Notes: generated from the letters alone by a model not told the origin. Shown: positions 3,001 to 33,050, counted from the stretch's first letter. The stretch is 52,939 nt of DNA from Macrostomum lignano (GCA_002269645.1 NIVC01004255.1:1-52939); one strand, 5' to 3'. Translations and numbers: made by a program.

Positions 3001-5880
3001 TTAGAGAGGCGCCCTTCATACATGTAGATTGATGGACAGAAGCAGTTAGAGAGGCCCTTGATCCAAGTAGATTGATAGACAGAAGCAGTTAGAGAGGCGC
3101 CCTTCATACAAGTAGATTGATGGACAGAAGCAGTTAGAGAGGCGCCCTTCATACATGTAGATTGATGGACAGAAGCAGTTAGAGAGGCGCCCTTGATCCA
3201 AGTAGATTGATAGACAGAAGCAGTTAGAGAGGCGCCCTTGATCCAAGTAGATTGATAGACAGAAGCAGTTAGAGAGGCGCCCTTGATCCAAGTAGATTGA
3301 TAGACAGAAGCAGTTAGAGAGGCGCCCTTGATCCAAGTAGATTGATAGACAGAAGCAGTTAGAGAGGCGCCCTTCATACATGTAGATTGATGGACAGATG
3401 CAGTTAGAGAGGCGCCCTTCATACATGTAGATTGATGGACAGAAGCAGTTAGAGAGGCGCCCTTGATCCAAGTAGATTGATAGACAGAAGCAGTTAGAGA
3501 GGCGCCCTTGATCCAAGTAGATTGATAGACAGAAGCAGTTAGAGAGGCGCCCTTGATCCAAGTAGATTGATAGACAGAAGCAGTTAGAGAGGCGCCCTTC
3601 ATACATGTAGATTGATGGACAGAAGCAGTTAGAGAGGCGCCCTTCATACATGTAGATTGATGGACAGAAGCAGTTAGAGAGGCGCCCTTCATACATGTAG
3701 ATTGATGGACAGAAGCAGTTAGAGAGGCGCCTTTCATACATGTAGATTGATGGACAGAAGCAGTTAGAGAGGCGCCCTTCATACATGTAGATTGATGGAC
3801 AGAAGCAGTTAGAGAGGCGCCCTTCATACATGTAGATTGATGGACAGAAGCAGTTAGAGAGGCGCCCTTCATACATGTAGATTGATAGACAGAAGCAGTT
3901 AGAGAGGCGCCCTTGATCCAAGTAGATTGATAGACAGAAGCAGTTAGAGAGGCGCCCTTGATCCAAGTAGATTGATAGACAGAAGCAGTTAGAGAGGCGC
4001 CCTTCATACAAGTAGATTGATGGACAGAATTCGCAGTTAGAGAGGCGCCCTTCATACATGTAGATTGATGGACAGAAGCAGTTAGAGAGGCGCCCTTGAT
4101 CCAAGTAGATTGATAGACAGAAGCAGTTAGAGAGGCGCCCTTGATCCAAGTAGATTGATAGACAGAAGCAGTTAGAGAGGCGCCCTTCATACATGTAGAT
4201 TGATGGACAGAAGCAGTTAGAGAGGCGCCCTTCATACATGTAGATTGATGGACAGAAGCAGTTAGAGAGGCGCCCTTCATACATGTAGATTGATGGACAG
4301 AAGCAGTTAGAGAGGCGCCTTTCATACATGTAGATTGATGGACAGAAGCAGTTAGAGAGGCGCCCTTGATCCAAGTAGATTGATAGACAGAAGCAGTTAG
4401 AGAGGCGCCCTTGATCCAAGTAGATTGATAGACAGAAGCAGTTAGAGAGGCGCCCTTCATACATGTAGATTGATGGACAGAAGCAGTTAGAGAGGCGCCC
4501 TTCATACATGTAGATTGATGGACAGAAGCAGTTAGAGAGGCGCCCTTGATCCAAGTAGATTGATAGACAGAAGCAGTTAGAGAGGCGCCCTTCATACATG
4601 TAGATTGATGGACAGAAGCAGTTAGAGAGGCACCCTTCATACATGTAGATTGATGGACAGAAGCAGTTAGAGAGGCGCCCTTCATACATGTAGATTGATG
4701 GACAGAAGCAGTTAGAGAGGCGCCCTTCATACATGTAGATTGATGGACAGAAGCAGTTAGAGAGGCGCCATTCATACATGTAGATTGATAGACAGAAGCA
4801 GTTAGAGAGGCGCCCTTGATCCAAGTAGATTGATAGACAGAAGCAGTTAGAGAGGCGCCCTTGATCCAAGTAGATTGATAGACAGAAGCAGTTAGAGAGC
4901 GCCCTTCATACAAGTAGATTGATGGACAGAATTCGCAGTTAGAGAGGCGCCCTTCATACATGTAGATTGATGGACAGAAGCAGTTAGAGAGGCGCCATTC
5001 ATACATGTAGATTGATAGACAGAAGCAGTTAGAGAGGCGCCCTTGATCCAAGTAGATTGATAGACAGAAGCAGTTAGAGAGGCGCCCTTCATACATGTAG
5101 ATTGATGGACAGAAGCAGTTAGAGAGGCGCCCTTGATCCAAGTAGATTGATAGACAGAAGCAGTTAGAGAGGCGCCCTTGATCCAAGTAGATTGATAGAC
5201 AGAAGCAGTTAGAGAGGCGCCCTTCATACAAGTAGATTGATGGACAGAATTCGCAGTTAGAGAGGCGCCCTTCATACATGTAGATTGATGGACAGAAGCA
5301 GTTAGAGAGGCGCCCTTGATCCAAGTAGATTGATAGACAGAAGCAGTTAGAGAGGCGCCCTTGATCCAAGTAGATTGATAGACAGAAGCAGTTAGAGAGG
5401 CGCCCTTGATCCAAGTAGATTGATAGACAGAAGCAGTTAGAGAGGCGCCCTTCATACATGTAGATTGATGGACAGATGCAGTTAGAGAGGCGCCCTTCAT
5501 ACATGTAGATTGATGGACAGAAGCAGTTAGAGAGGCGCCCTTGATCCAAGTAGATTGATAGACAGAAGCAGTTAGAGAGGCGCCCTTGATCCAAGTAGAT
5601 TGATAGACAGAAGCAGTTAGAGAGGCACCCTTGATCCAAGTAGATTGATAGACAGAAGCAGTTAGAGAGGCGCCCTTGATCCAAGTAGATTGATAGACAG
5701 AAGCAGTTAGAGAGGCACCCTTGATCCAAGTAGATTGATAGACAGAAGCAGTTAGAGAGGCACCCTTGATCCAAGTAGATTGATAGACAGAAGCAGTTAG
5801 AGAGGCGCCCTTGATCCAAGTAGATTGATAGACAGAAGCAGTTAGAGAGGCACCCTTGATCCAAGTAGATTGATAGACAG
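1..5880. repeat. 45-bp minisatellite, ~130 copies, truncated by window start
   Basis: Unit ATACATGTAGATTGATGGACAGAAGCAGTTAGAGAGGCGCCCTTC alternates with a variant (GATCCAAGTAGATTGATAGAC...). The 15-aa periodicity of the minus-strand ORFs matches 45 bp. Abrupt end at 5880. Confidence 0.98.
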
Positions 5881-6325
5881 ACTCCCTGTAAGCCTGTTTT
5901 TTGAAAATTGAATGGAAAATAGGTTTGATATTATTGTAAAAGTTTAATGTACTTTACCTTAAAAGCTGGTTGTCAATTGATAGGCGTTACTCAAGAGCTT
6001 TACTACAGCTAGATATATTTCCAAAATGGCCTAAATGATAACAAGACTTGGATAAATACTCAGGGCCTAGCCTTCTTAGAGCTAGCCTATGCCTAGTTTT
6101 AAAGCTGGCCTGTAGTGAGGAAATACTAGGCCTACCAATGTAAGAGTCAGCCTACTTGAGCTGTGGGATTTCAAACCAGCCAATAGGAACCAGACAGCGA
6201 ATTTTTACTCTTGGATGACTAACGCGAATTCTCACATTCACATGCCACAGCCAGGCTCCATATCCTTATTTTGCGCAGAACTAGGACCATTGCGCGTACG
6301 TCGGCCTAGGCCTCATCAATACAAC

Positions 6326-11654: not shown

Positions 11655-12330
11655 CTCTCTATCTCTCCATCAGCCGCCCGTCTACTCTCTATCAGCCGCC
11701 CGTCTCCTCTCTATCAGCCGCCCGTCTCCTCTCTATCAGCCGCCCGTCTCCTCTCTATCAGCTGCCTGTCTCCTCTCTATCAGCCGCCCGTCTCCTCTCT
11801 ATCAGCCGCTTGTCTATCTCCTCTCTATAAGCTGCCTGTCTCCTCTCTATCAGCCGCCCGTCTCCTCTCTATCAGCCGCTTGTCTATCTCCTCTCTATAA
11901 GCTGCCTGTCTGTCTCCTCTCTATCAGCCGCCCGTCTCCTCTCTATCAGCCGCCCGTCTCCTTTCTATCAGCCGCTTGTCTATCTCCTCTCTATCAGCTT
12001 TCTGTCTCCTCTCTATCAGCCGCCCGTCTCCTCTCTATCAGCCGCTTGTCTATCTCCTCTCTATCAGCGGCTTGTCTCCTCTCTATCAGCCGCCTGCCTG
12101 TCTCCTCTTTATCAGCTTTCTGTCTATCTCCACTCTATCAGCCGCCCGTCTCCCCTCTATCAGCCACCCGTCTCCTCTCTATCAGCCGCCCGTCTCCTCT
12201 CTATCAGCCGCCCGTCTCCTCTCTATCAGCCGCCCGTCTCCTCTCTATCAGCCGCCTGCCTGTCTCCTCTCTATCAGCTGCCTGTCTATCTCCTCTCTAT
12301 CAGCTGCCTGTCTATCTCCTCTCTATCAGC
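11655..12330. repeat. 22-bp (variant 26-bp) pyrimidine-rich minisatellite
   Basis: Unit CCTCTCTATCAGCCGCCCGTCT; longer variant CCTCTCTATCAGCCGCTTGTCTATCT. Confidence 0.95.
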
Positions 12331-13117
12331 TCTCTATCAGATTTTGAATATTTATTGCGAGCTTTTTCTTTCTTGTCTTTGCAAAAAATCTACATGTATA
12401 CAAGGCTGGGGTAAACAGATGAAGCCAATGAGCCTATGGTTTTGGCGGTCCACCTTGTTGCAGTGATTGCAGTTTGAGAACGAGGTGATGGTTTTCTGGA
12501 AAATTTTAAGAATCCACAGCATTTTTTCTTCACATCTTGCATGCGACTACTTGAAGTAAAAATTTACGAGTATGATGAGAAAAAATAAAATATAAAATTA
12601 CAAGAACTTGTTTGCAAAAAAATCGTTTTTTTACAATTTTTTACTTTTACTTTATTCTTCTTCCTTAAGTTTTGAAAAATATTAACTATATGATAAAAAA
12701 AGGTTAAAAGTATACTAGAGGTACTTTTTTCTTTCAAAAACAAGGTAATAATGCCAAAATAAATGCTTATGTTGAAAGCTGAAACATTAGTAGGTCCTTC
12801 AGAAGAACTCCGAAATGGGCAAAGTATCAGCTCTGCTTTAAAGAACTTGTGTTTTTTAAAAATTCTTTAATGCTTTTCCGATTTGACTGTCTAAAATAAG
12901 TAGAAAAATATGGCTTTTTATCAATTTAGCATGAAAGAGTTTAAAGAAATGGCAAAAAGGTAAAAATCACGATTTTTCTATTCAATGGGGGGTACTCTAT
13001 TCAAATGCAGATAAACAATATTTTTCTACATTTATCTAAGCGAAAGTTATACTTTTTAGAAAGAGTATGAATTAATCTTTACAATGATATATATTTTAGA
13101 AAAAACGAACGAGAAAT

Positions 13118-13230: not shown

Positions 13231-14696
13231 TCTACTTGTGCAATAAAGTAAAGCAAACATTCATTTGAAAGAAAAAAATGTTTTAAACAACTTCGGAGTA
13301 GTTTCATTTTATTACACATTAAACTTTTTTTGCTATCTATGAGAGAATGTCGAAAAATGACACTTTCATGTTCGGTTGATGAGATCTTACCCTATGTTGT
13401 ATAATTATAGAGTGTAACATTATAAGATAGTTAAAGTTATTAAAATACATTATTATAGCTTTTCTATCATTTTCATTAGACTCATTTTAGGTCGTAATTA
13501 AACTTACCGTTTTAACAAATCATTTTATTAAAAATAAAGCTATACAAAAATAATTTGTGCTTTAATAGACTTTTTTACCTTTTAAAAACTTGAATAAATT
13601 TATTTTATAGCTTTATTGCTTTCAAATTGCCAAAAAACGAATTTTCATAAAACTTGCCCCTGATTTTTGGATTTCACCATTATCAATGAAAATGGTAACA
13701 TACAATTATTGTAAAAAGATTTATAACTTTTTTACTTGACAAATTTCAAAAGCAAGATGTCTTTTTATCCAGGCAAATAAATTTTATCAAATACAGTTAA
13801 AAAGTACTAATAAAATAACTAGGCCTATCAAAATCTCACTGGGCTGGAGTCCCTACTTATGGTTATACTCAACTTAAATGGGAATAAAGATTACATACTA
13901 CCATCTAATATACTAAATACAGACATACTAAATTTACTTACCCCCATATAATGTAATTAGTCTTTGTACTCTTAGGATAGGCAAAGTCTCCAAAGATAAC
14001 TTCATCATCTTTTTCTACTATTTCTTTATTTTTTATAGTGTAGTCTCGAATTATTGAAAGAACATCAGCCATGACAATACAAATTATTAACTACTTTAAT
14101 TTTTAAGGACTTGATCAGAAAAAAATTCACTGTAATTTTAGCCTGCAAATTTACAACGATTTCTTTCTAAGGCTCTAAACTCAACTAGCTCTCTAGCGGC
14201 TACCGAACAACACTATACTATACACTCGTCGTCATGCAATACAATATTTTTTCGTTGACTAGTTTTAAAAACTAGTTTTAATTCTTTAAAAATAACAAAA
14301 TTGTATAAAAAAGCAAATGCTAAAAAGCAATGAAAGTTAAAAAATTTTCAAAAAAATTAAACGAAATGTTTTTTATATGCTTTACTTTGGATCCAAATTC
14401 TTTTTTAAAAATTACTGTTTTCTAACTCAAATCCTCGCGCGCCAACTCCAACGCGACACTCTGGATAGATCACTCCACTCTCGCCCATTTTCATTTATGG
14501 ATGTTGATCTAAACTGAAACTTGAAGGTAAAAAACACTGAAGTTACTGACTTGACTATAGGTCACATGGGCAAAAATTACGCAACTGGTGTGGTGTACAA
14601 TGCTATAATTATATACTTTTTTTATTTAGACCTACAATACAATATGTGGCTTGTGGCCTAATGGTGCCCTAACCCACTGACCAAGAGCAATGGCTA

Positions 14697-14982
14697 GAGT
14701 TCCAGCACTGGAACCCATTTTCTAATAGCTATGGATCGGGCAGTCTTCTGCAGGCAGTTATCTACTAATACTAATGACATCTTTGAACATTAGAAGTATC
14801 TTCTTTTGAATCTCATCATTTTGTTTTGATCTCAGGCCCTATTTTGAACAAAATCTCAATATAAACCACCTGTCAAAAATTAAAATGTTTCTGCTATATT
14901 ATACCCATAAACTGCACTACAGGAATACCATTGCTAGATCCAAAGCCATTAAAAATGGGTTCCAATGCCAGAACTGGAACTC
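14697..14982. mobile_element. MITE (~286 bp), GAG...CTC termini flanked by TA
   Basis: ~45-bp imperfect TIR: GAGTTCCAGCACTGGAACCCATTTTCTAATAGCTATGGATC versus the reverse complement of the right end, GAGTTCCAGTTCTGGCATTGGAACCCATTTTTAATGGCTTTGGATC. TA at 14695-96 and 14983-84. Confidence 0.7.
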
Positions 14983-15191
14983 TAAGTCTCGAGCCTTTGC
15001 CCTGACCAAGACCTGATAGGCCTATGAGACCTACACCCTAGGCCCCTAGCCTAAACCTAGGCTAGTCAATGAGTCAAGCTAGGCATAATATTTTTAATAA
15101 AAAATAATGTATTCTTATAGTTATGCCTTCAGGTTGTTCTACAATTGGGTCCCATCATGTTTTTGAACTTTAAGCACTTGTAACTTTTGAA

Positions 15192-15848
15192 GGTGCGCAG
15201 TCATTTCGTCTGCCGCCTTTTCGTCTGCCGGCAGACAAAACGACTTTTTAAAATAAGTAGCAAAATAAGTTTTATAAATGGCTGAAATTAATTTATAGTT
15301 TATTTTTAATACTTATAATTTACTAGTAATTTTCAGATTTAGAATTAGATGTAGTCTTTGTATTTTTTATTTTGCTTATCGCAATGTTTCCAAGAAATAC
15401 AATTATTCGTATATAAGCTTTAATTGAATCTACGTAGTGAGCTATGAATGGGATTTATAATTTGTGCGCGTGTAACCTACTTATAATAAGTAAAATAATT
15501 CCAACTCGACTAATTGCTTTTGAGCTTTGAAGCTTTGAGACGGTTAAGAGATAGTATGGCGTCTGCCATATCATGACGAAAATGCATTGAATTCGTTCAA
15601 TTGCGTAGTTTAATAAATATAAAAAAATATTTAGAAATTACTCGTTTAAGTCATTACTACTAAGAAATGATCCCAATATCTTAGTCATTGTTATCTTAAA
15701 TATCTCAAATCTCAAATTAATGACAACAACTGACATATTTACACTTATTAAAACTTTATTGTTCGTTGGCAGACGAAACAACTGTATCGTATTCTTGCAG
15801 ACGAAAGGGTGGCAGACGAACTGGCGGCAGACGAAACAACCGTCAACC
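15192..15848. mobile_element. MITE (657 bp) with 8-bp TSD and GG...CC termini
   Basis: Perfect TSD CTTTTGAA (15184-15191 and 15849-15856). Both ends start GGT. Subterminal TTCGTCTGCC motifs are repeated and inverted at both ends. AT-rich non-coding interior. Confidence 0.85.
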
Positions 15849-15989
15849 CTTTTGAACTAGGGCCTATAGACCTAACATATTGTAGCCGCGTATTCTTGAA
15901 TTTGAACTGCCGGGACTTCTTTAGTCAGAGAAAAACTTGATTTATTTGCATTCCAGCTTGCTTGATTAAATAGACTGACTGCGATGGGG

Positions 15990-16230
15990 GAGGGCAGGGT
16001 GAAAAACGCAGCTTAGAAAATCCTAACCAATTGGATTTCGTCGATAGGGTAGGCACTAAGCACTCTATTGGTTGGGGCTCGTTATTCACGCGTTTTCAGC
16101 CAATCAGAAACAAAAAGAAATTTCTAGAAAAGACTATACGCAGGGGTGGGGTGACGCAGAAAGAAATATGGAGAAAACATCCGAAAACACTAGAAGAACA
16201 CTAGAAGTGCACGCGCACGCAAATTGAGCA
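15990..16230 (+). promoter_or_regulatory. Candidate promoter of BRX1 (or of a BRX1-GLMN unit)
   Basis: CCAAT boxes (AACCAATTGG, ATTGGTT, AGCCAATCAG), ACGCGT, GGGGTGGGG and GCACGCGCAC in a CpG-rich patch within otherwise very AT-rich DNA, ~1.9 kb upstream of the BRX1 acceptor. Confidence 0.45.
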
Positions 16231-16472
16231 CTATTACAATATAGAAAAAAAGTGGAAAAAGCAATCTGTGTCAAACTTCTCATTCTATATTTTTCTCATA
16301 GTTGCTTTTGAATTCTAAAACAGCTGAACACATAGTAGAGCATATGAACAATGTTATAGTTTATACTTTACTTTGGTATGTGTTTAGTTGTTTTAGAAAT
16401 TGATTGGGGGGGCAATTGTTTAGTCACTGTCAGCATATTTTATGTTTTGCTATAGCTATATGTTTTTTTGAT

Positions 16473-17103
16473 GGCACATGACCAAGATGGCCACACACCA
16501 AGATGGCCATAGCTTTAAACATCTAGATCAATAATGATAGCCTAATCCTAGCCTAGGTCTTTATATTTCACTTATTTCTTATTGATAATAATTTATATTA
16601 GGTATAGATCGTTAAGTCTTAGGCCTAAGGAGATAGATACTATAATATATCTATATTATATAATAATAATTCCTTTTGGCTTCAGCTTTTATTATAACCT
16701 AACCTATGGATATTTATCTAGGCCTACTACTAAATAAAACAAGTATATAGCCTAGTACAAAATAAAAACCTTGTTGCATATTAATCTCATTTTTATATAG
16801 CATTACTACTAGCAATGGTTTCTTGATAAACTAATAATAGCGATAGATCAGATGGATATAATGATAAAGAATAAGCCTAAATTGGCATAAACACTAAAAA
16901 AGATTAAAGTTTTTGTATTAGAGGTAATTATTTTCAAATCCATTATTGTTTTAATATTTATAAATATGATTGATTAAACATGCTATATAAAAAATAATAT
17001 AACAATAGATGTTACATTTCTAATTAATATTAAATGAAGAGTGGATATAATAGACATGCAATATTGTGGCCATCTTGGTATGTAGCCATCTTAGTCTTAT
17101 ACC
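16473..17103. mobile_element. Mutator-like MITE (631 bp) with 9-bp TSD
   Basis: Perfect TSD TTTTTTGAT (16464-16472 and 17104-17112). ~39-bp imperfect TIR starting GG, containing two CCAAGATGGCC motifs. GG termini plus a 9-bp TSD are typical of MULEs. Confidence 0.85.
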
Positions 17104-18119
17104 TTTTTTGATTATTCTCAAGGAACTCAAAGTAACAGGTATCTCTTTGGGAAAGAGCAATGGTAGTATGAAATACAAATAAGGTTTAAAATATACCTAC
17201 TTTCTAACCTATAAAATGGGCAACCACATATATGCCCAACCTCAAAATTTTACCCGTCCAATGCAATTTAGTTTTGTCCAGATTTGCAACTTAGTTCCTC
17301 TTGATAGCAACTTAGTTCCCCTAATTGTGACTTAATTTTAACTTTGTATATGACTTTTCTTGCCTTTTTCTTTTTTTCTCTTTTTCTTTCTCTCCTTTTT
17401 TCCTCTCTCTTTTCTCCCTCCTTTCTTTTCCTTTTCTCTTCCTCTCCTTTTTTTCCTTTCCCAATTTTTCATTTTTTGCATTTTCAATTTTGAAACTTAC
17501 CTTGGCTAGCAGCTATTTCACCCATCCAGTTTGGATAAGTTGGATAGGTGTTGGGTATATATGGGCAACCATATGGTGCATTGATTAAAAATGGCACAAA
17601 TATAAGGATAAGCAAGAGCATTGCAAACAAAGTTGATTAGCAAAAGTTTTAATACGTGGTCATTAAGCACTTTTAGCTTTTCATTAAGATATTATTCATA
17701 GAAATGGCAAAGGTGATTTGCCATTGTAATAAATATTAGTAATATTCAAAATAACTTAATTAATAGTTGGTTAAAATGACACTACATGATAGTTCTTATT
17801 AGTTTTGGTATATCATATATAAAATAAATATGCCCAAAGTGCAAGATGTAGTTTTGTTTAGTTTAAAAGACATTCTGTATTGTCTTTAAAAATGTATAAG
17901 ACTTTTAAAAGCTATTTAATTTAGTACCATCACAAGTCTTATCAGTTATGAACTATAAGTGTTCTTACCTAGTTTGTTTTAAATTAACAAAATCAAGTAT
18001 TGACAATGGGCATTCTTTCTGTCCCTGAAAAGGTGCTCAAATTCTAGTAATTTGATGGCATTTAAAAGCTCATATTTAACTGTGGAATATACTTTAAACT
18101 GGCTTCTTTTTGCTTTCAG

Positions 18120-19148
18120 AAGCGATCAAAGCAACAGCTCGGAGCTTCTGCCAATGGCCAACCAGTGGCCAAGAAGCAGAAAACTGCAAGTGCTAATGTG
18201 TCTGTAGAGAAAAAGTTGCCACCAAAGCAGATTATGCCAGACAAGGTGCAAGCAAAATCAAAGAAGAAACAGACAATAAACTTGAAGCCGGGAAAAAAAG
18301 CTAAACAGTCTCAGGCCACCCGACACATTGAGAATCCGCTCAAGCAGCCAGGCGTGCTGCCTCCCAAAGTGCGCAGCGGTGGCGACGCTGTTAAAAAATC
18401 AGAATGGACCAACCGGCAGAGGCTACTTACAGTAGCTTCACGCGGCGTCTCCTATCTTGGCCGGCATCTGTTGAAAGATTTTCAAGCCCTGCTGCCTCAG
18501 GCGAAATCCGATTCCAAGTTTGCTGGCAAAGATCAGTTAATTTTGTTGAACGAAATCGCCGAGATGCGCAATGCTAGTCACGTGATGTACGTGGAAACCA
18601 GGCGGAAACAGGATCTGTACATGTGGATTAGCCGGGTTGGCACTGGGCCAAGCGTGAAGTTTCTAGTTGAAAATGTTCACACTATGAGCGAACTGAAGCT
18701 AACTGGCAACTGTCTGAAAGGCTCCCGACACATCGTCGCTTTTGATTCGGCTTTCGAATCGAATGCTCAGCTTCGCCTAGTTAAAGAACTGTTCACCCAG
18801 GTATTCAACGTGCCGCGGTCTCATCCGCGTAGCAAACCATTCGTTGATCACGTGATGCTATTAGCTTGGCTAGACGGTCGAATCTGGCTTAGAAATTATC
18901 AGATCGTGAATGAAACTGGCGACATGGCCGAGATCGGGCCTCGTTGCGTTCTTCGACCAATTCGAATCTGGTCCGGTAGCTTCACTGGTCCTTGCCTGTT
19001 CGACAATCCGGCTTATGTGCCGCCGCCTAGACTGCGGGCTAACAACAGTTCTAAGTATGTTAGCAAGCTGCAGGCCAAGATGAGACAGCGGCTGCATTCG
19101 GATCTGCCGGCTTATATTGATGATCCTACTGACCAGGTGTTCCAGTGA
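18120..19148 (+). CDS. BRX1: Ribosome biogenesis protein BRX1 (Brix domain); coding exon starts at a splice acceptor, initiator AUG not encoded here
   Basis: Hallmark motifs WTNRQRLLTVASRGVSYLGRHLLKDF, ENVHTMSELKLTGNCLKGSR, HPRSKPFVDHV, WLRNYQI, EIGPR..L..IRIWSGSFTGP. The frame is open from the TTTTTGCTTTCAG acceptor (AG 18118-19; KRSKQQ...) to TGA 19146-48. Fallback in-frame ATG at 18234. Confidence 0.95.
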   Translation, partial: KRSKQQLGASANGQPVAKKQKTASANVSVEKKLPPKQIMPDKVQAKSKKKQTINLKPGKKAKQSQATRHIENPLKQPGVLPPKVRSGGDAVKKSEWTNRQRLLTVASRGVSYLGRHLLKDFQALLPQAKSDSKFAGKDQLILLNEIAEMRNASHVMYVETRRKQDLYMWISRVGTGPSVKFLVENVHTMSELKLTGNCLKGSRHIVAFDSAFESNAQLRLVKELFTQVFNVPRSHPRSKPFVDHVMLLAWLDGRIWLRNYQIVNETGDMAEIGPRCVLRPIRIWSGSFTGPCLFDNPAYVPPPRLRANNSSKYVSKLQAKMRQRLHSDLPAYIDDPTDQVFQ

Positions 19149-19627: not shown

Positions 19628-21996
19628 TGGTAGAACTGTAGAGTATATATTGCCCGGTAGAACTGTAGAGTAGATATTGCCCGGTAGAACTGTAGAGTAT
19701 ATATTGCCCGGTAGAACTGTAGAGTAGATATTGCCCGGTAGAACTGTAGAGTATATATTGCCCGGTAGAACTGTAGAGTAGATATTGTCCGGTAGAACTG
19801 TAGAGTATATATTGTCCGGTAGAACTGTAGAGTAGATATTGTCCAGTAGAACTGTAGAGTAGATATTGTCCGGTAGAACTGTAGAGTAGATATTGTCCGG
19901 TAGAACTGTAGAGTAGATATTGTCCGGTAGAACTGTAGAGTAGATATTGTCCGGTAGAACTGTAGAGTAGATATTGTCCGGTAGAACTGTAGAGTAGATA
20001 TTGTCCGGTAGAACTGTAGAGTAGATATTGTCCGGTAGAACTGTAGAGTAGATATTGTCCGGTAGAACTGTAGAGTAGATATTGTCCGGTAGAACTGTAG
20101 AGTAGATATTGTCCGGTAGAACTGTAGAGTAGATATTGTCCGGTAGAACTGTAGAGTAGATATTGTCCGGTAGAACTGTAGAGTAGATATTGTCCGGTAG
20201 AACTGTAGAGTAGATATTGTCCGGTAGAGCTGTAGAGTAGATATTGTCCGGTAGAACTGTAGAGTATATATAGGCTGGTAGAGCTGTAGAGTAGATATTG
20301 TCCGGTAGAACTGTAGAGTAGATATTGTCCGGTAGAACTGTAGAGTAGATATTGTCCGGTAGAACTGTAGAGTAGATATTGTCCGGTAGAACTGTAGAGT
20401 AGATATTGTCCGGTAGAACTGTAGAGTAGATATTGTCCGGTAGAATTGTAGAGTAGATATTGTCCGGTAGAATTGTAGAGTAGATATTGTCCGGTAGAAC
20501 TGTAGAGTAGATATTGTCCGGTAGAACTGTAGAGTAGATATTGTCCGGTAGAACTGTAGAGTAGATATTGTCCGGTAGAACTGTAGAGTAGATATTGTCC
20601 AGTAGAACTGTAGAGTAGATATTGTCCGGTAGAACTGTAGAGTAGATATTGTCCGGTAGAACTGTAGAGTAGATATTGTCCGGTAGAACTGTAGAGTAGA
20701 TATTGTCCGGTAGAACTGTAGAGTAGATATTGTCCGGTAGAACTGTAGAGTAGATATTGTCCGGTAGAACTGTAGAGTAGATATTGTCCGGTAGAACTGT
20801 AGAGTAGATATTGTCCGGTAGAACTGTAGAGTAGATATTGTCCGGTAGAACTGTAGAGTAGATATTGTCCGGTAGAACTGTAGAGTAGATATTGTCCGGT
20901 AGAACTGTAGAGTAGATATTGTCCGGTAGAACTGTAGAGTAGATATTGTCCGGTAGAACTGTAGAGTATATATTGCCCGGTAGAACTGTAGAGTAGATAT
21001 TGTCCGGTAGAACTGTAGAGTAGATATTGTCCAGTACAACTGTAGAGTAGATATTGTCCGGTAGAACTGTAGAGTAGATATTGTCCGGTAGAACTGTAGA
21101 GTAGATATTGTCCGGTAGAACTGTAGAGTAGATATTGTCCGGTAGAACTGTAGAGTATATATTGCCCGGTAGAACTGTAGAGTAGATATTGTCCGGTAGA
21201 ACTGTAGAGTAGATATTGTCCAGTACAACTGTAGAGTAGATATTGTCCGGTAGAACTGTAGAGTAGATATTGTCCGGTAGAATTGTAGAGTAGATATTGT
21301 CCGGTAGAACTGTAGAGTAGATATTGTCCGGTAGAACTGTAGAGTAGATATTGTCCGGTAGAACTGTAGAGTAGATATTGTCCGGTAGAACTGTAGAGTA
21401 GATATTGTCCGGTAGAACTGTAGAGTAGATATTGTCCGGTAGAACTGTAGAGTAGATATTGTCCGGTAGAACTGTAGAGTAGATATTGTCCGGTAGAACT
21501 GTAGAGTAGATTTTGTCCGGTAGAACTGTAGAGTAGATATTGTCCGGTAGAACTGTAGAGTATATATTGCCCGGTAGAACTGTAGAGTAGATATTGTCCG
21601 GTAGAACTGTAGAGTAGATATTGTCCAGTACAACTGTAGAGTAGATATTGTCCGGTAGAACTGTAGAGTAGATATTGTCCGGTAGAACTGTAGAGTAGAT
21701 ATTGTCCGGTAGAACTGTAGAGTAGATATTGTCCGGTAGAACTGTAGAGTAGATATTGTCCAGTAGAACTGTAGAGTAGATATTGTCCGGTAGAACTGTA
21801 GAGTAGATATTGTCCGGTAGAACTGTAGAGTAGATATTGTCCGGTAGAACTGTAGAGTAGATATTGTCCGGTAGAACTGTAGAGTAGATATTGTCCGGTA
21901 GAACTGTAGAGTAGATATTGTCCGGTAGAACTGTAGAGTATGTACTGTCCGGTAGAACTGTAGAGTAGATATTGTCCGGTAGAATTGTAGAGTAGA
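19628..21996. repeat. 27-bp minisatellite, ~88 copies, between BRX1 and GLMN
   Basis: Unit GTAGAACTGTAGAGTAGATATTGTCCG. Produces the spurious (ISTLQFYRT)n ORF. Confidence 0.98.
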
Positions 21997-22135
21997 TAGG
22001 CAGATGAGACTGTCCAGATATGCAGGCTTAGCAGGGTATATTATAAACTTCTGTACGCTCGTATAGTTATGAATTCTCATAATCAGACGTTCAAAAAGGT
22101 CCCATCCGCCATAACATCAAAACTAATCTGAATGC

Positions 22136-22972
22136 ATGGATCCCGAAGCGCCCAAACTGCAGCTGCCGCTAACAGCGGAAGTTGAGCAGAGCCTAGCTGC
22201 AGATGACGAACAGAGGCTGCGCAGATGTCTGGACTCAGCCACAGATAAAGCCTTGGCTATAGAAGCATGGGACATTGCCCGATGCCTGTCGCTCTATCTG
22301 ACTCAGGGGAATCTTGAGAATCAGCCTGTATTATTTGTCCTATGCTCAACTGTGCTCAGAGATCGGGTATCAAAAATTGGCAGCGCCAAAGAAGTCCTCC
22401 TGGTGCTGATGGAAGCGCTAGACTGTTTTAAAGACGATTGCCGATTTGAGCACTTGATTCCGTCGGTTAGGAATTGCTTGAGTCGGGCTGGCGCCGCTAG
22501 CGCAGAGGCTGCTCTCGAAGTTCTCGGCGCTCATATTCAGTCCTGCGAAGATCCTCCGCCTCAGCTTGAAGGCGAAGAATTAGCCTTGATGCAGTCAGAT
22601 CCGGAGACTCAACGAGCTCTGAGATTAACTAGTCAGCTAGTGCAATTCATGAACGATTTGTTGCAGGACGCGGGTTCGAATCCGCCGAATAGACTAGTTC
22701 GAGCTGTGACTAATAGCGGGCTTAAATTGCTGGAGAAACCGCTGCTGCCTGCGGATCTGTGCTGGACCGGTAAGGATCAGCGGCTTAAATCCGATGCTTG
22801 CGAATTAGCTGCGGAAGTCACCAAACTGCTAACTGGTGTGCTGGGCCATCGCCTGGTCGATCTGGTGCTGAATGGGTCTGTTGATGATGTCACTGCATCC
22901 TCTCAGGCCAGATTGGCTTTGGCGTTTGTTGTTCTGACTGGAGCCTGCGGGCTTGGCGCTGCTTTTCCTCAG
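22136..22972 (+). CDS. GLMN: Glomulin (GLMN/FAP68, ALF4/YBP-family), exon 1 of 3
   Basis: ATG 22136; AWDI and SAKEVLLVLMEALD resemble the glomulin N-terminal GWDL and PKE.LL..LE motifs. Phase-0 donor CAG|GTGAGT after 22972 (279 codons). Confidence 0.85.
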
Positions 22973-22994
22973 GTGAGTGTGGGATGTTCATTGT

Positions 22995-24420
22995 CCTATA
23001 TTATATCCGCCTTATCAGGTGTGTGTGGGATTATATCCCCCTTATCAAGTGTGTGGGATTATATCCCCTCTATGGGGTATGTGCGATTATATCCCCTCTA
23101 GTGCATGTGGAATTATCCCCTCTATCAGGTGCATTTTTTGATTATATACCCTCTATGGAGTGCATGTGGTATTACATCCCCTCTATCAGGCGTGTGTGTG
23201 CGATTATATCCCATTCAATTAGGTGTGTGGGGTTATATCCCCTCTATCAGGTTGTGTGGGGGTTATATCCCCTCTATCAGGTTGTGTATGGGATTATATC
23301 CCATTCAATTAGGTGTGTAGGGGTTATATCCCCTCTATCAGGTTGTGTGGGGTTATATCCCCTCTATCAGGTTGTGTATGGGATTATATCCCATTCAATT
23401 AGGTGTGTAGGGGTTATATCCCCTCTATCAGGTGTGTGTGGGATTCTATCCCCTCTATTAGGTGTGTGGGATTATATTCCCTCTCAGGTGTGTGGGATTA
23501 TATTCCCTCTATTAGGTGTGTGGGATTATATCCCCTCTATCAGGTGTGTGTGCGGGATTATATCCCATCTATCAGGTGTGTGTGGGATTATATCCCATCT
23601 ATCAGGTGTGTGTGGGATTATATCCCATCTATCAGGTGTGTGTGGGATTATATCCCATCTATCAGGTGTGTGTGGGATTATATCCCATCTATCAGGTGTG
23701 TGTGGGATTATATCCCATCTATCAGGTGTGTGTGGGATTATATCCCATCTTTCAGGTGTGTGTGGGATTATATCCCATCTATCAGGTGTGTGTGGGATTA
23801 TATCCCATCTATCAGGTGTGTGTGTGATTATATCCCATCTATCAGGTGTGTGTGTGGGATTATATCCCATCTATCAGGTGTGTGTGGGATTATATCCCAT
23901 CTTTCAGGTGTGTGTGGGATTATATCCCATCTTTCAGGTGTGTGTGGGATTATATCCCATCTATCAGGTGTGTGTGGGATTATATCCCATCTATCAGGTG
24001 TGTGTGGGATTATATCCCCTCTATCAGGTGTGTGTGGGATTATATCCCATCTATCAGGTGTGTGTGGGATTATATCCCATCTATCAGGTGTGTGTGGGAT
24101 TATATCCCATCTATCAGGTGTGTGTGGGATTATATCCCCTCTATCAGGTGTGTGTGGGATTATATCCCATCTATCAGGTGTGTGTGGGATTATATCCCAT
24201 CTATCAGGTGTGTGTGGGATTATATCCCATCTATCAGGTGTGTGTGGGATTATATCCCCTCTATCAGGTGTGTGTGGGATTATATCCCATCTATCAGGTG
24301 TGTGTGGGATTATATCCCATCTATAAGGTGTGTGTGGGATTATATCCCATCTATCAGGTGTGTGTGGGATTATATCCCATCTACCAGGTGTGTGTGGGAT
24401 TATATCCTCTCTATCAGGGT
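22995..24420. repeat. 30-bp minisatellite filling GLMN intron 1
   Basis: Unit TCAGGTGTGTGTGGGATTATATCCCATCTA with internal GGGAT-TAT-ATCCC hairpin. Degenerate toward the 5' end, homogeneous from ~23550. Confidence 0.97.
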
Positions 24421-24526
24421 GTTTGAGATCAGGGGAGCATCAGGGGAGCAGGGGAGCAGACTGTTCTCATCTTATTTAGTATCCTTTCTAGTAATGACAG
24501 TTGCCCAATAACTCGTCACTGGGCAG

Positions 24527-28184: not shown

Positions 28185-31100
28185 CAGTGACTGAAGTGTC
28201 TGTAAACTCTTCTGTTGACTGAAGTGTCTGTAAACTCTTCTGTTGACTGAAGTGTCTGTAAACTCTTCTGTTGACTGAAGTGTCTGTAAACTCTTCTGTT
28301 GACTGAAGTGTCTGTAAACTCTTCTGTTGACTGAAGTGTCTGTAAACTCTTCTGTTGACTGAAGTGTCTGTAAACTCTTCTGTTGACTGAAGTGCCTGTA
28401 AACTCTTCTGTTGACTGAAGTGTCTGTAAAGTAGTCTGTTAACTGAAGTGTCTGCAAACTCTTCTGTTAACTGAAGTGTCTGTAAACTAGTCTGTTGACT
28501 GAAGTGTCTGTAAACTCTTCTGTTAACTGAAGTGTCTGCAAACTCTTCTGTTAACTGAAGTGTCTGTAAACTAGTCTGTTGACTGAAGTGTCTGTAAACT
28601 CTTCTGTTGACTGAAGTGTCTGTAAACTCTTCTGTTGACTGAAGTGTCTGCAAACTCTTCTGTTGACTGAAGTGTCTGTAAACTCTTCTGTTGACAGAAG
28701 TGTCTGTAAACTAGTCTGTTAACTGAAGTGTCTGTAAACTAGTCTGTTGACTGAAGTGTCTGTAAACTAGTCTGTTGACTGAAGTGTCTGTAAAGTAGTC
28801 TGTTGACTGAAGTGTCTGTAAACTAGTCTGTTAACTGAAGTGTCTGTAAACTCTTATGTTAACTGCAGTGTCTGTAAACTAGTCTGTTGACTGAAGTGTC
28901 TGTAAACTCTTCTGTTGACTGAAGTGTCTGTAAACTAGTCTGTTGACTGAAGTGTCTGTAAACTCTTCTGTTGACTGAAGTGTCTGTAAACTCTTCTGTT
29001 GACTGAAGTGTCTGTAAACTCTTCTGTTAACTGAAGTGTCTGTAAACTCTTCTGTTGACTGAAGTGTCTGTAAACTCTTCTGTTGACTGAAGTGTCTGTA
29101 AACTCTTCTGTTAACTGAAGTGTCTGTAAACTCTTCTGTTGACTGAAGTGTCTGTAAACTCTTCTGTTGACTGAAGTGTCTGTAAAGTAGTCTGTTGACT
29201 GAAGTGTCTGTAAACTAGTCTGTTGACTGAAGTGTCTGTAAACTAGTCTGTTGACTGAAGTGTCTGTAAACTAGTCTGTTGACTGAAGTGTCTGTAAACT
29301 AGTCTGTTGACTGAAGTGTTTGTAAACTAGTCTGTTGACAGAAGTGTCTGTAAACTAGTCTGTTGACTGAAGTGTCTGTAAACTCTTCTGTTGACTGAAG
29401 TGTCTGTAAACTCTTCTGTTGACTGAAGTGTCTGTAAACTCTTCTGTTAACTGAAGTGTCTGTAAACTAGTCTGTTGACTGAAGTGTCTGTAAACTCTTA
29501 TGTTAACTGAAGTGTCTGTAAACTAGTCTGTTGACTGAAGTGTCTGTAAACTCTTATGTTAACTGAAGTGTCTGTAAACTCTTATGTTAACTGCAGTGTC
29601 TGTAAACTAGTCTGTTGACAGAAGTGTCTGTAAACTCTTATGTTAACTGAAGTGTCTGTAAACTCTTATGTTAACTGAAGTGTCTGTAAACTAGTCTGTT
29701 AACTGAAGTGTCTGTAAACTCTTATGTTAACTGAAGTGTCTGTAAACTCTTATGTTAACTGCAGTGTCTGTAAACTAGTCTGTTAACTGAAGTGTCTGTA
29801 AACTCTTATGTTAACTGAAGTGTCTGTAAACTCTTATGTTAACTGCAGTGTCTGTAAAGTAGTCTGTTAACTGAAGTGTCTGTAAACTCTTCTGTTGACT
29901 GAAGTGTCTGCAAACTCTTATGTTAACTGAAGTGTCTGTAAACTCTTATGTTAACTGCAGTGTCTGTAAACTAGTCTGTTAACTGAAGTGTCTGTAAACT
30001 CTTATGTTAACTGAAGTGTCTGTAAACTCTTATGTTAACTGAAGTGTCTGTAAACTAGTCTGTTAACTGAAGTGTCTGTAAACTCTTATGTTAACTGAAG
30101 TGTCTGTAAACTAGTCTGTTAACTGAAGTGTCTGTAAACTCTTATGTTAACTGAAGTGTCTGTAAACTCTTATGTTAACTGCAGTGTCTGTAAACTAGTC
30201 TGTTAACTGCAGTGTCTGTAAAGTAGTCTGTTAACTGAAGTGTCTGTAAACTCTTCTGTTGAATGAAGTGTCTGTAAACTCTTATGTTAACTGAAGTGTC
30301 TGTAAACTCTTATGTTAACTGCAGTGTCTGTAAACTAGTCTGTTGACTGAAGTTTCTGTAAACTCTTCTGTTGACTGAAGTGTCTGTAAACTAGTCTGTT
30401 AACTGAAGTGTCTGTAAACTAGTCTGTTGACTGAAGTGTCTGTAAACTCTTATGTTAACTGCAGTGTCTGTAAACTCTTATGTTGACTGCAGTGTCTGTA
30501 AACTAGGCTGTTAACTGCAGTGTCTGTAAACTCTTCTGTTGACTGAAGTGTCTGTAAACTCTTATGTTAACTGCAGTGTCTGTAAACTAGTCTGTTAACT
30601 GAAGTGTCTGTAAACTCTTATGTTAACTGAAGTGTCTGTAAACTCTTATGTTAACTGCAGTGTCTGTAAACTAGTCTGTTAACTGCAGTGTCTGTAAAGT
30701 AGTCTGTTAACTGAAGTGTCTGTAAACTCTTCTGTTGACTGAAGTGTCTGTAAACTCTTATGTTAACTGAAGTGTCTGTAAACTCTTATGTTAACTTCAG
30801 TGTCTGTAAACTAGTCTGTTGACTGAAGTTTCTGTAAACTCTTCTGTTGACTGAAGTGTCTGTAAACTCTTCTGTTAACTGAAGTGTCTGTAAACTAGTC
30901 TGTTGACTGAAGTGTCTGTAAACTCTTATGTTAACTGCAGTGTCTGTAAACTCTTATGTTAACTGCAGTGTCTGTAAACTAGGCTGTTAACTGAAGTGTC
31001 TGTAAACTCTTCTGTTGACTGAAGTCTCTGTAAACTAGTCTGTTGACTGAAGTGTCTGTAAACTCTTCTGTTGACTGAAGTGTCTGTAAACTAGTCTGTT

Positions 31101-32941: not shown

Positions 32942-33050
32942 TACTGTCCTTTTCTGTCATTTCTGTCAACTTGAGTATTTTTACTGTAGTGCCTGTCAAC
33001 TGCAGTAATTGAACTTCTATTAAATAACGTGCTAGAGAATGGCCACTCAC

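What the first reader, a model, noticed from the sequence alone, without database searches (positions are those of the whole stretch)
18100..18236. BRX1 appears to borrow its start codon from a trans-spliced leader
Seen: the BRX1 frame opens exactly at a strong acceptor (TTTTTGCTTTCAG|AAG CGA TCA AAG, phase 0). Upstream in the genome the frame hits TAA at 18063 with no ATG. The first ATG after the acceptor (18154) is out of frame and stops at 18207; the first in-frame ATG is 38 codons in (18234). Established: flatworm spliced leaders end in a conserved AUG that can act as the initiator methionine. Inference: SL-AUG + AAG... gives MKRSKQQLGASANGQPVAKKQ..., a 343-aa BRX1 with a basic N-terminus like other BRX1 proteins. 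An essential gene would then be untranslatable in full length without trans-splicing.
Basis: partly seen in the sequence, partly recalled or inferred. Interest (0 to 1): 0.8.

Follow-up and report, generated by a model that had tools for sequence, protein, structure and literature searches.

The report
Spliced leader supplies BRX1 start codon
In the flatworm Macrostomum lignano the ribosome-assembly gene BRX1 has no start codon of its own at the front of its reading frame and most likely takes it from the AUG that ends the trans-spliced leader, a known flatworm mechanism, so this is a sound but ordinary example.

Summary
The window is Macrostomum lignano contig NIVC01004255.1. GenBank annotates exactly 18120-19145 as a 342-aa "partial" BRX1 that lacks its ATG.

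The M. lignano spliced leader (SL) is 35 nt and ends in ATG. Joined at 18119|18120 it gives in-frame MKRSK…, and 59 of 99 distinct BRX1 orthologue N-termini match M-x(0-2)-KR.

There is indirect RNA evidence. The assembly was polished with RNA-seq. In a second copy of the locus the four bases before AAG have been overwritten by the SL tail (GCTGCATG|AAG instead of GCTTTCAG|AAG). The next gene downstream (glomulin-like, window 22139) shows the same scar and also needs the SL AUG, because its first in-frame Met is residue 91.

A 304-aa product from the ATG at 18234 would keep the whole Brix domain.

The mechanism has been known since Cheng et al. 2006, and a 2023 genome paper notes it for Macrostomum. 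This is therefore a new member of a known kind and of low interest.

No SL-containing read was seen directly. A 3-codon upstream micro-exon (17704-17712, "MAK") remains a minor rival.

The parts
18100..18119 (+). Polypyrimidine tract and trans-splice acceptor TGGCTTCTTTTTGCTTTCAG; the last six bases TTTCAG fit the published M. lignano trans-splice acceptor motif [T/C]TNCAG
   Evidence: Sequence; motif in PMC8629364; the annotated CDS begins at the next base
18120..19148 (+). BRX1 (Brix domain) coding exon: a single exon of 342 codons plus TGA, annotated in GenBank as a 5'-partial CDS of the BOX15_Mlig032767g1 family
   Evidence: Differences among the three copies are 6 synonymous to 1 non-synonymous
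18120..18233 (+). The 38 N-terminal codons (KRSKQQLGAS…KQI) that can be translated only from an AUG supplied upstream of the exon. GC is 47% here against 28% in the 300 nt before the acceptor
   Evidence: KR directly after the SL Met matches the orthologue N-termini
18154..18207 (+). Out-of-frame small ORF (MANQWPRSRKLQVLMCL*) that a scanning ribosome would meet before 18234 if the SL AUG were absent. A second out-of-frame ATG lies at 18196
18234..18236 (+). First in-frame genomic ATG (codon 39), the alternative start that would give a 304-aa protein with a complete Brix domain
18063..18065 (+). In-frame TAA in the outron that closes the BRX1 frame upstream of the acceptor
14073..18119 (+). 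Divergent intergenic region between the CDC73 ATG (14072, minus strand) and the BRX1 acceptor. It must contain the BRX1 promoter and outron; the transcription start site is not located. The sub-stretch 15192-16238 is an insertion specific to this copy
17704..17712 (+). The only upstream candidate cis exon in the right phase: ATGGCAAAG|GTGATT, which would give MAK+KRSK…. This is the rival feature, not part of the favoured model
   Evidence: The donor -1 G is lost in copy L001. Oyster and nemertean orthologues have no intron at this position
19629..21998 (+). 27-bp tandem array (about 88 copies) in the spacer between BRX1 and the next trans-spliced gene. Its copy number differs among the three locus copies
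22134..22138 (+). GCATG immediately before the annotated ATG-less CDS start of the glomulin-like gene, read as an SL-tail polishing scar over the true acceptor (inferred TTGCAG)
   Evidence: the window and L002 read GCATG, L001 reads TTGCTG. Polishing method
22139..22999 (+). First coding exon of the glomulin-like (PF08568) gene. The annotated CDS starts at GAT, the first in-frame Met is residue 91, and the exon's 3' end is approximate. This is a second SL-AUG-dependent gene

Best explanation
The BRX1 pre-mRNA of Macrostomum lignano is transcribed from a promoter somewhere in the roughly 4-kb divergent spacer shared with CDC73. Its 5' outron is removed by spliced-leader (SL) trans-splicing at the acceptor TTTCAG|AAG (18119|18120).

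The 35-nt SL ends in AUG. The mature mRNA therefore reads …UUAUUGCAUG|AAGCGAUCA…, and the SL AUG (nt 33-35, with G at -3) is the first AUG and is in frame with the intronless BRX1 ORF. Translation from it gives a 343-aa protein, MKRSKQQ…

What is shown and what is inferred:
- Shown: the sequence anatomy, the species and its SL sequence, the annotation boundary, and the SL-tail footprint in a paralogous copy.
- Inferred: that the footprint comes from SL-bearing RNA-seq reads, and that ribosomes actually initiate at the SL AUG.

The downstream glomulin-like gene is built the same way. By the published repeat-adjusted-distance criterion it probably forms an operon with BRX1.
For: 1. Species and SL. 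P0001 is 100% identical over 342 aa and is named 'BOX15_Mlig032767g1, partial [Macrostomum lignano]'. The SL sequence, ending in ATG, is given in PMC8629364.

2. Annotation boundary. In all three genomic copies the annotated CDS begins at the first base after the AG and lacks an ATG. The authors trimmed the SL from reads and cut transcripts at SL-read peaks.

3. Polishing scar. Copy L002 reads GCTGCATG|AAG where the window and L001 read GCTTTCAG|AAG. These are four consecutive substitutions in a 99%-identical alignment, each to the SL base at -2 to -5, while -7 and -8 stay genomic. The assembly was polished with Pilon using STAR-mapped RNA-seq.

4. Same scar at the next gene. It appears in 2 of 3 copies, and the third copy has an intermediate state (TTGCTG) with neither AG nor ATG. 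Per-base polishing explains that state; biology does not.

5. Orthologue N-termini. 59 of 99 distinct BRX1 N-termini match ^M.{0,2}KR, against a background of 1.9% per position. MKRSK matches; MPDKVQ (Met-39) does not.

6. Two out-of-frame ATGs precede the first genomic in-frame ATG.

7. The acceptor fits the published [T/C]TNCAG motif.

8. Variable sites among the copies fall from about 4% in the outron to 0.8% in the CDS, starting at the acceptor. The single change within the first 38 codons is synonymous.

9. Precedent. The flatworm SL AUG was shown to act as an initiator (Cheng et al. 2006, as cited). A Macrostomum genome paper states that the final ATG of the SL is the translation start codon.
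Against: - No SL-containing read or cDNA for this gene was seen directly. The exact 343-aa protein is not in the protein collection, and a junction search of metagenome contigs found nothing.
- The scar is in a paralogous copy, not in the window itself.
- The N-terminal region is low-complexity, and at 96 aa before the WTN motif it is longer than in most orthologues (median 41). A Met-39 start (57 aa before WTN) would also look normal.
- A 38-codon open frame occurs by chance in about 12% of shuffles.
- A candidate cis micro-exon in the right phase exists at 17704-17712.
Confidence: 0.78

Rival explanations
1. The mRNA is trans-spliced, or simply starts near 18120, but translation begins at the genomic ATG at 18234. 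This would give a 304-aa BRX1, and the first 114 nt would be 5' UTR that happens to be open in frame.
For: - 304 aa is the typical BRX1 length (median 307.5), and 57 aa before the WTN motif is closer to the orthologue median of 41.
- The Brix domain (residues 107-282) would be fully retained.
- A 38-codon open stretch occurs in 12.5% of shuffles.
Against: - With the SL attached, its AUG comes first, is in frame, and has a purine at -3.
- Two out-of-frame ATGs (18154 and 18196) precede 18234.
- MPDKVQ lacks the N-terminal KR(K) motif found in 59 of 99 orthologue N-termini, whereas MKRSK has it.
- The neighbouring gene has no in-frame Met for 90 codons, so use of the SL AUG is clearly needed at this locus.
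Confidence: 0.1
2. A cis-spliced 5' micro-exon (…ATGGCAAAG|GTGATT, 17704-17712) is joined to the same acceptor. This would give MAK-KRSKQQ…, so the start codon would be genomic and the SL not required, either as the main form or as an alternative isoform.
For: - It is the only upstream ATG-to-donor candidate in phase 0 between 14.1 and 18.06 kb.
- MAKKRSK resembles orthologue N-termini such as MAKKRK and MAKRKR.
- Parasitic flatworms often share acceptors between cis- and trans-splicing (PMC12582326).
Against: - About two such candidates are expected by chance from the 11 donor-like sites in this AT-rich region. This is my own estimate.
- The donor -1 G is lost in copy L001, and the exon is no better conserved than its surroundings.
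- Oyster and nemertean BRX1 have no intron after codon 3; their first exons encode 40 and 36 aa.
- The annotated model has no such exon and is left 5'-partial.
- The polishing scar at the acceptor is the SL tail (GCAT), not the micro-exon tail (CAAA).
Confidence: 0.07
3. The GCATG before AAG in copy L002, and before GAT at the glomulin-like gene, is real DNA. On this reading some gene copies have acquired a genomic ATG at the former trans-splice site and no longer depend on the SL.
For: The sequences are present in the deposited assembly. Ustyantsev and Berezikov report that a sequence once taken for the SL RNA maps to the 5' end of a trans-spliced protein-coding gene in Mlig_3_7.
Against: - It needs four adjacent substitutions that exactly match the SL at -2 to -5, occurring independently at two genes.
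- L001 shows an intermediate TTGCTG with neither an acceptor nor an ATG.
- The annotation still places SL-defined 5' ends at these positions.
- The assembly is documented to have been polished with RNA-seq.
Confidence: 0.03

Closest known systems
Schistosoma mansoni mRNAs that use the SL 3'-terminal AUG as initiator methionine (Cheng, Cohen, Ndegwa and Davis 2006, J Biol Chem 281:733; cited in PMC9851317, PMC12582326, PMC5832876)
   Same: The flatworm SL ends in AUG. The SL AUG is joined in frame to an ORF that has no AUG of its own at its 5' end. The targets are conserved housekeeping genes.
   Different: This is a different species and SL sequence, from a free-living macrostomorph. Initiation at the SL AUG was tested experimentally in that work, whereas here it is inferred.
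slORFs: ORFs created by SL addition (slORFfinder, PMC9851317)
   Same: The start codon is contributed by the leader, and the ORF is invisible to genome-only annotation.
   Different: slORFs in nematodes, ascidians and euglenozoa mostly rely on non-AUG NUG codons and are often novel or short ORFs. Here a canonical AUG starts a conserved full-length protein.
Macrostomum SL as treated in the M. cliftonense / M. hystrix genome paper (PMC10468722)
   Same: The same genus and a near-identical SL. [quoted passage not shown]
   Different: That paper makes a general statement and does not discuss BRX1. The M. lignano Mlig_3_7 annotation instead trimmed the ATG, which left CDSs such as this one flagged 'partial'.
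Nematode SL1 trans-splicing of outrons
   Same: Outron removal at a normal 3' splice site and operon resolution. BRX1 and the glomulin-like gene meet the published operon distance criterion.
   Different: Nematode SL1 and SL2 do not end in AUG, so the start codon there is genomic.

Membership tests
Flatworm SL-AUG-initiated mRNA (Cheng et al. 2006 type) | The organism's spliced leader ends in AUG immediately before the SL donor site | tested here: met
   The M. lignano SL is CGGTCTCTTACTGCGAAGACTCAATTTATTGCATG, followed by GTAAG in the SL RNA gene (PMC8629364). The species was identified.
Flatworm SL-AUG-initiated mRNA (Cheng et al. 2006 type) | The gene's 5' exon boundary is a trans-splice acceptor that receives the SL in vivo | tested here: met
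   The evidence is indirect. The annotated 5'-partial CDS starts at the base after TTTCAG in three copies, from a pipeline that cuts at SL-read peaks. An SL-tail polishing scar GCATG|AAG is present in copy L002. No SL read was inspected directly.
Flatworm SL-AUG-initiated mRNA (Cheng et al. 2006 type) | The SL AUG is in frame with the main ORF, with no intervening stop | tested here: met
   The exon starts in phase 0 at 18120, and the frame is open to TGA at 19146.
Flatworm SL-AUG-initiated mRNA (Cheng et al. 2006 type) | No genomic in-frame AUG at or near the 5' end of the ORF in the mature mRNA | tested here: met
   The first in-frame ATG is codon 39 (18234), preceded by out-of-frame ATGs at 18154 and 18196.
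Flatworm SL-AUG-initiated mRNA (Cheng et al. 2006 type) | Translation actually initiates at the SL AUG, giving a protein N-terminus of MKRSK… | not testable with these tools
   There is only comparative support: the M-x(0-2)-KR N-terminus occurs in 59 of 99 distinct orthologue N-termini.
BRX1 / Brix-domain ribosome biogenesis protein | A Brix domain above the Pfam gathering score, with best hits to BRX1 orthologues | tested here: met
   PF04427 scores 129.7 bits against a cut-off of 28.2. Top hits are named BRX1 homologues at about 50% identity with E around 1e-90.
M. lignano SL-resolved operon (criterion of Ustyantsev and Berezikov 2021) | Adjacent same-strand trans-spliced genes with a repeat-adjusted intergenic distance below 1 kb | tested here: met
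   The BRX1 stop is at 19148 and the next acceptor at 22138. The distance is 2990 nt minus a 2370-nt tandem array, about 620 nt; in L001 it is about 617 nt. The criterion is given. A polycistronic transcript itself was not observed.

The most novel reading that the evidence does not exclude
The GCATG found in the assembly in place of the acceptor (the BRX1 copy on NIVC01003351.1, and the glomulin-like gene in this window and on that contig) might be real DNA rather than a polishing scar. In that case the leader's terminal AUG would have been copied into the genome at former trans-splice sites, for example by RNA-templated repair from SL-bearing mRNA. Recently duplicated gene copies would then have been converted from SL-dependent to autonomous translation starts.
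Probability: 0.04. Interest if true: 0.7.

Novelty: new member of a known kind. Interest (0 to 1): 0.2.

Why it matters
Biologically this is a clean example, in a basal free-living flatworm, of a mechanism established in schistosomes. Two neighbouring housekeeping genes, BRX1 and a glomulin-like gene, have lost any start codon of their own and depend on the leader's AUG. That makes trans-splicing obligatory for their full-length products.

The practical consequences matter more:

- CDSs flagged 'partial' in the GenBank Mlig_3_7 annotation may, like this one, lack only the Met encoded by the leader.
- At this locus the assembly carries RNA-seq polishing scars that overwrite trans-splice acceptors with the SL tail. 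These destroy the AG and create false genomic ATGs.
- If such scars are widespread, they could bias acceptor-motif statistics and start-codon calls made on this assembly. The published acceptor motif was found at only 9,551 of 21,754 trans-splice sites. I did not test whether the scars contribute to that shortfall.

Tried and rejected
- **SL RNA gene in the window.** The Rfam scan found no RNA family at gathering score. A search for 29 nt of the SL with up to 3 mismatches found nothing. The SL RNA gene is therefore not here.
- **Exact protein look-ups.** Neither the 343-aa (M+342) nor the 304-aa (Met-39) protein is in the collection, so no transcript-derived protein is available to settle the start.
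- **SL-BRX1 junction in metagenome contigs.** No hits.
- **Gene ID Mlig032767, BRX1 or BRIX1 in papers and supplements.** Nothing held. The Wasik 2015 PNAS paper is not held.
- **Short SL-tail pattern in the window.** The count was not above chance overall: 42 found against 51 expected. The tail motif therefore means something only where it replaces an acceptor in an otherwise identical paralogue.
The ATG at 16345 reaches the GTATGT donor in phase 2 and would create TGA at the junction (read). The adjacent CCAAT-containing, GC-richer stretch at 15.98-16.23 kb lies in an insertion absent from the other two copies. Rejected.
- **Retrogene origin of the intronless CDS from an SL-bearing mRNA.** Rejected, because the window and L001 have a normal acceptor and no SL sequence upstream.
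- **Ancestral intron after codon 3.** Not found in oyster or nemertean BRX1.

Full report
**Observation**

- A pyrimidine tract and acceptor, TTTTTGCTTTCAG, end at 18119.
- From 18120 (AAG CGA TCA AAG) a single frame runs 342 codons to TGA at 19146-19148.
- Upstream in that frame there is a TAA at 18063 and no ATG before the acceptor.
- The ATGs after the acceptor are at 18154 and 18196, both in frame +1. The small ORF from 18154 ends at 18207. The first in-frame ATG is at 18234, which is codon 39.
- The product is a genuine BRX1: Pfam Brix domain, 129.7 bits, residues 107-282, and about 50% identity to many animal BRX1 proteins.
- Taken alone the pattern is only modestly unlikely. 12.5% of shuffles of the 114 nt stay open, and multiplying by 1/3 for phase gives about 0.04.

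**Identity of the locus**

- The best database hit is 100% identical over exactly these 342 residues. It is named 'hypothetical protein BOX15_Mlig032767g1, partial [Macrostomum lignano]'.
- The window is the whole contig NIVC01004255.1 of assembly GCA_002269645.1 (Mlig_3_7).
- Two further copies of the locus exist, on NIVC01002096.1 (L001) and NIVC01003351.1 (L002). This fits the known large-chromosome duplication in the sequenced DV1 line.
- In all three copies the annotated CDS starts at the first base after the acceptor and has no ATG.
- The three CDSs differ at 7 codons, 6 of them synonymously, so the copies are under purifying selection.

**The spliced leader and how the annotation was made**

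- M. lignano has one 35-nt spliced leader (SL), CGGTCTCTTACTGCGAAGACTCAATTTATTGCATG. It is attached to about 30% of genes, preferentially conserved ones.
- The top enriched motif at its acceptors is [T/C]TNCAG (PMC8629364). The BRX1 acceptor TTTCAG fits that motif.
- The Mlig_3_7 gene models were built by trimming the SL from reads, mapping the remainder, and cutting transcripts at the resulting peaks. ORFs were then called with TransDecoder (PMC5730564).
- A CDS that begins, ATG-less, on the first base after an AG is what that pipeline yields when the only start codon was in the trimmed leader. This last step is my inference.

**An RNA footprint left in the assembly**

- Over 480 nt around the acceptor the three copies are 99% identical. 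In L002, however, the bases before AAG read GCTGCATG, where the window and L001 read GCTTTCAG.
- These are four adjacent substitutions at -2 to -5. Each changes the base to the one the SL carries at that position (…TTGCATG). Positions -7 and -8 remain genomic.
- The methods of PMC5730564 state that the Canu assembly was polished with Pilon using Illumina DNA reads and RNA-seq mapped by STAR.
- Reads that begin a few bases inside the SL, if aligned end to end, would out-vote the DNA reads just upstream of a trans-splice site. I therefore read GCATG|AAG as a scar left by SL-BRX1 junction reads.
- L002 also has a private synonymous SNP 11 nt downstream of the junction (AAG to AAA, codon 4). I infer that this would make junction reads map uniquely to L002, which may explain why only this copy was altered.

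**The same pattern at the next gene**

- The gene 3 kb downstream is glomulin-like (PF08568). Its annotated CDS starts at GAT (22139), again without an ATG.
- The preceding bases are GAATGCATG in the window and L002, but AATTGCTG in L001.
- Assuming a true acceptor of TTGCAG, the first two copies again show -2 to -5 rewritten to GCAT. L001 shows only -2 rewritten, which leaves neither an AG nor an ATG.
- Per-base polishing explains such a half-converted site easily. Biology does not.
- This ORF has no in-frame Met until residue 91, so it too needs the SL AUG.

**Does translation start at the SL AUG?**

- With the leader attached, the AUG at nt 33-35 is the first AUG. It has G at -3 and is in frame.
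- Among the 116 retrieved homologues that start with Met there are 99 distinct N-termini. Of these, 59 match M-x(0-2)-KR (for example MAPKRKQQ, MGKRKR, MGKRSRK). The background frequency of KR elsewhere in the N-terminal regions is 1.9% per position.
- MKRSKQQ fits this pattern; MPDKVQ, from Met-39, does not.
- Without the SL AUG, a scanning ribosome would meet two out-of-frame AUGs before 18234.
- Variable sites among the copies drop from about 4% in the 700 nt of outron to 0.8% in the CDS, beginning at the acceptor. The single change in the first 38 codons is synonymous.
- These points favour the SL AUG, but they are comparative evidence and not proof.

**Qualifications and rivals**

1. *The Met-39 start.* A Met-39 product (304 aa) keeps the whole Brix domain and has the typical orthologue length (median 307.5). 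The gene is therefore not necessarily functionless without trans-splicing; only the first 38 residues depend on it.
2. *An upstream cis micro-exon.* A scan of 14.1-18.06 kb for ATG-to-donor exons in phase 0 found one candidate, ATGGCAAAG|GTGATT at 17704-17712. It would give MAK-KRSK, also a plausible BRX1 N-terminus.
   - I estimate that about two such candidates are expected by chance.
   - The donor's -1 G is lost in L001, and the exon is not better conserved than its surroundings.
   - Oyster and nemertean BRX1 have no intron after codon 3.
   - The annotation has no such exon, and the scar at the acceptor is the SL tail rather than the micro-exon tail.
   - I keep it as a minor rival, or a possible minor isoform.
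The CCAAT-containing stretch just upstream (15.98-16.23 kb) lies inside a 1,047-bp insertion (15192-16238) that the other two copies lack.
4. *A tandem acceptor.* CAG|AAG is a tandem (NAGNAG) acceptor. Use of the second AG would still be in frame and would give M-RSKQQ. This is read from the sequence and was not tested.

**Context**

- BRX1 lies head to head with CDC73, whose ATG is at 14072 on the minus strand. The BRX1 promoter and outron must therefore lie within about 4 kb.
- After subtracting the 27-bp tandem array, the distance from the BRX1 stop to the glomulin-like acceptor is about 620 nt. That is below the 1-kb repeat-adjusted threshold used to call M. lignano operons.

**Comparison with what is known**

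- All reported flatworm SLs end in AUG (PMC12582326).
- According to PMC9851317 (also cited), Cheng et al. [quoted passage not shown] - I found no mention of SL-AUG use in the three M. lignano papers I could read, and none of this gene.
- BRX1 is therefore a new, well-supported instance of a known mechanism and not a new kind of thing.

**Verdict**

My confidence is about 0.78 that the SL AUG is the main start.
- Novelty is low. The most useful by-product is technical: the 'partial' flag here reflects only a missing leader-encoded Met, and the Mlig_3_7 assembly contains SL-tail polishing scars at trans-splice acceptors.

Noticed in passing
window 22134-22999 (also L001 ~12311-12316 and L002 ~13046-13051): The next gene downstream is glomulin-like (PF08568, 608 aa). 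Its annotated CDS starts without an ATG at GAT (22139), immediately after GCATG, and its first in-frame Met is residue 91. It is a second SL-AUG-dependent gene. The GCATG (TTGCTG in L001) looks like an RNA-seq polishing scar over a TTGCAG acceptor.
   Followed up: yes
L002 9996-10000 (NIVC01003351.1 ~73823-73827, minus strand): The BRX1 acceptor in this paralogous copy reads GCATG|AAG instead of TTCAG|AAG. These are four adjacent changes to the SL tail, which create a false genomic ATG and remove the AG. The assembly was polished with RNA-seq.
   Followed up: yes
window 14233-14241, minus strand: TATTGCATG, an exact match to the last 9 nt of the SL, lies 160 nt upstream of the CDC73 ATG on the CDC73 strand and is identical in all three copies. 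It may be a third SL scar marking the CDC73 trans-splice site; the SL AUG there would open a 5-codon mini-ORF, MTTSV*. A second copy of the 9-mer at 17055-17063 (minus strand) has no gene context, so chance is not excluded.
   Followed up: partly
window 13393-14072: Only the first coding exon of CDC73 ([11 protein letters not shown]…, ATG at 14072, minus strand) is present in this contig. The stretch 13393-13678 is inverted relative to the other two copies and is followed by tandem arrays. No CDC73 is annotated within the stretch whose gene calls were returned (8120-29148). This is either a rearranged, truncated copy or a misassembly.
   Followed up: partly
window 15192-16238: Two adjacent insertions are absent from L001 and L002. 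The first is a 656-bp MITE-like element (15192-15847) with imperfect terminal inverted repeats and an 8-bp target-site duplication, CTTTTGAA. The second is a 358-bp piece (15881-16238) carrying the CCAAT-containing, GC-richer stretch that looked promoter-like.
   Followed up: partly
whole window, e.g. 1-5881, 19629-21998, 28188-32947: About 56% of the contig (29.8 of 52.9 kb) is tandem arrays with periods of 4-142 bp. The 27-bp array between BRX1 and the glomulin-like gene is 2.4 kb here, against about 0.7 kb in L001 and about 1.4 kb in L002. A 30-bp array (23000-24429) sits inside the glomulin-like gene.
   Followed up: partly
window 18120-19148: The M. lignano BRX1 CDS is intronless. The oyster and nemertean orthologues span about 3.5 kb, with a first intron after 40 and 36 codons respectively.
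   Followed up: partly
window 17360-17460 versus L002 8631-9301: The CT-rich low-complexity tract in the BRX1 outron is about 670 bp longer in copy L002.
   Followed up: no
window 18117-18122: CAG|AAG is a tandem (NAGNAG) acceptor. Splicing at the second AG would still leave the SL AUG in frame and give M-RSKQQ….
   Followed up: no
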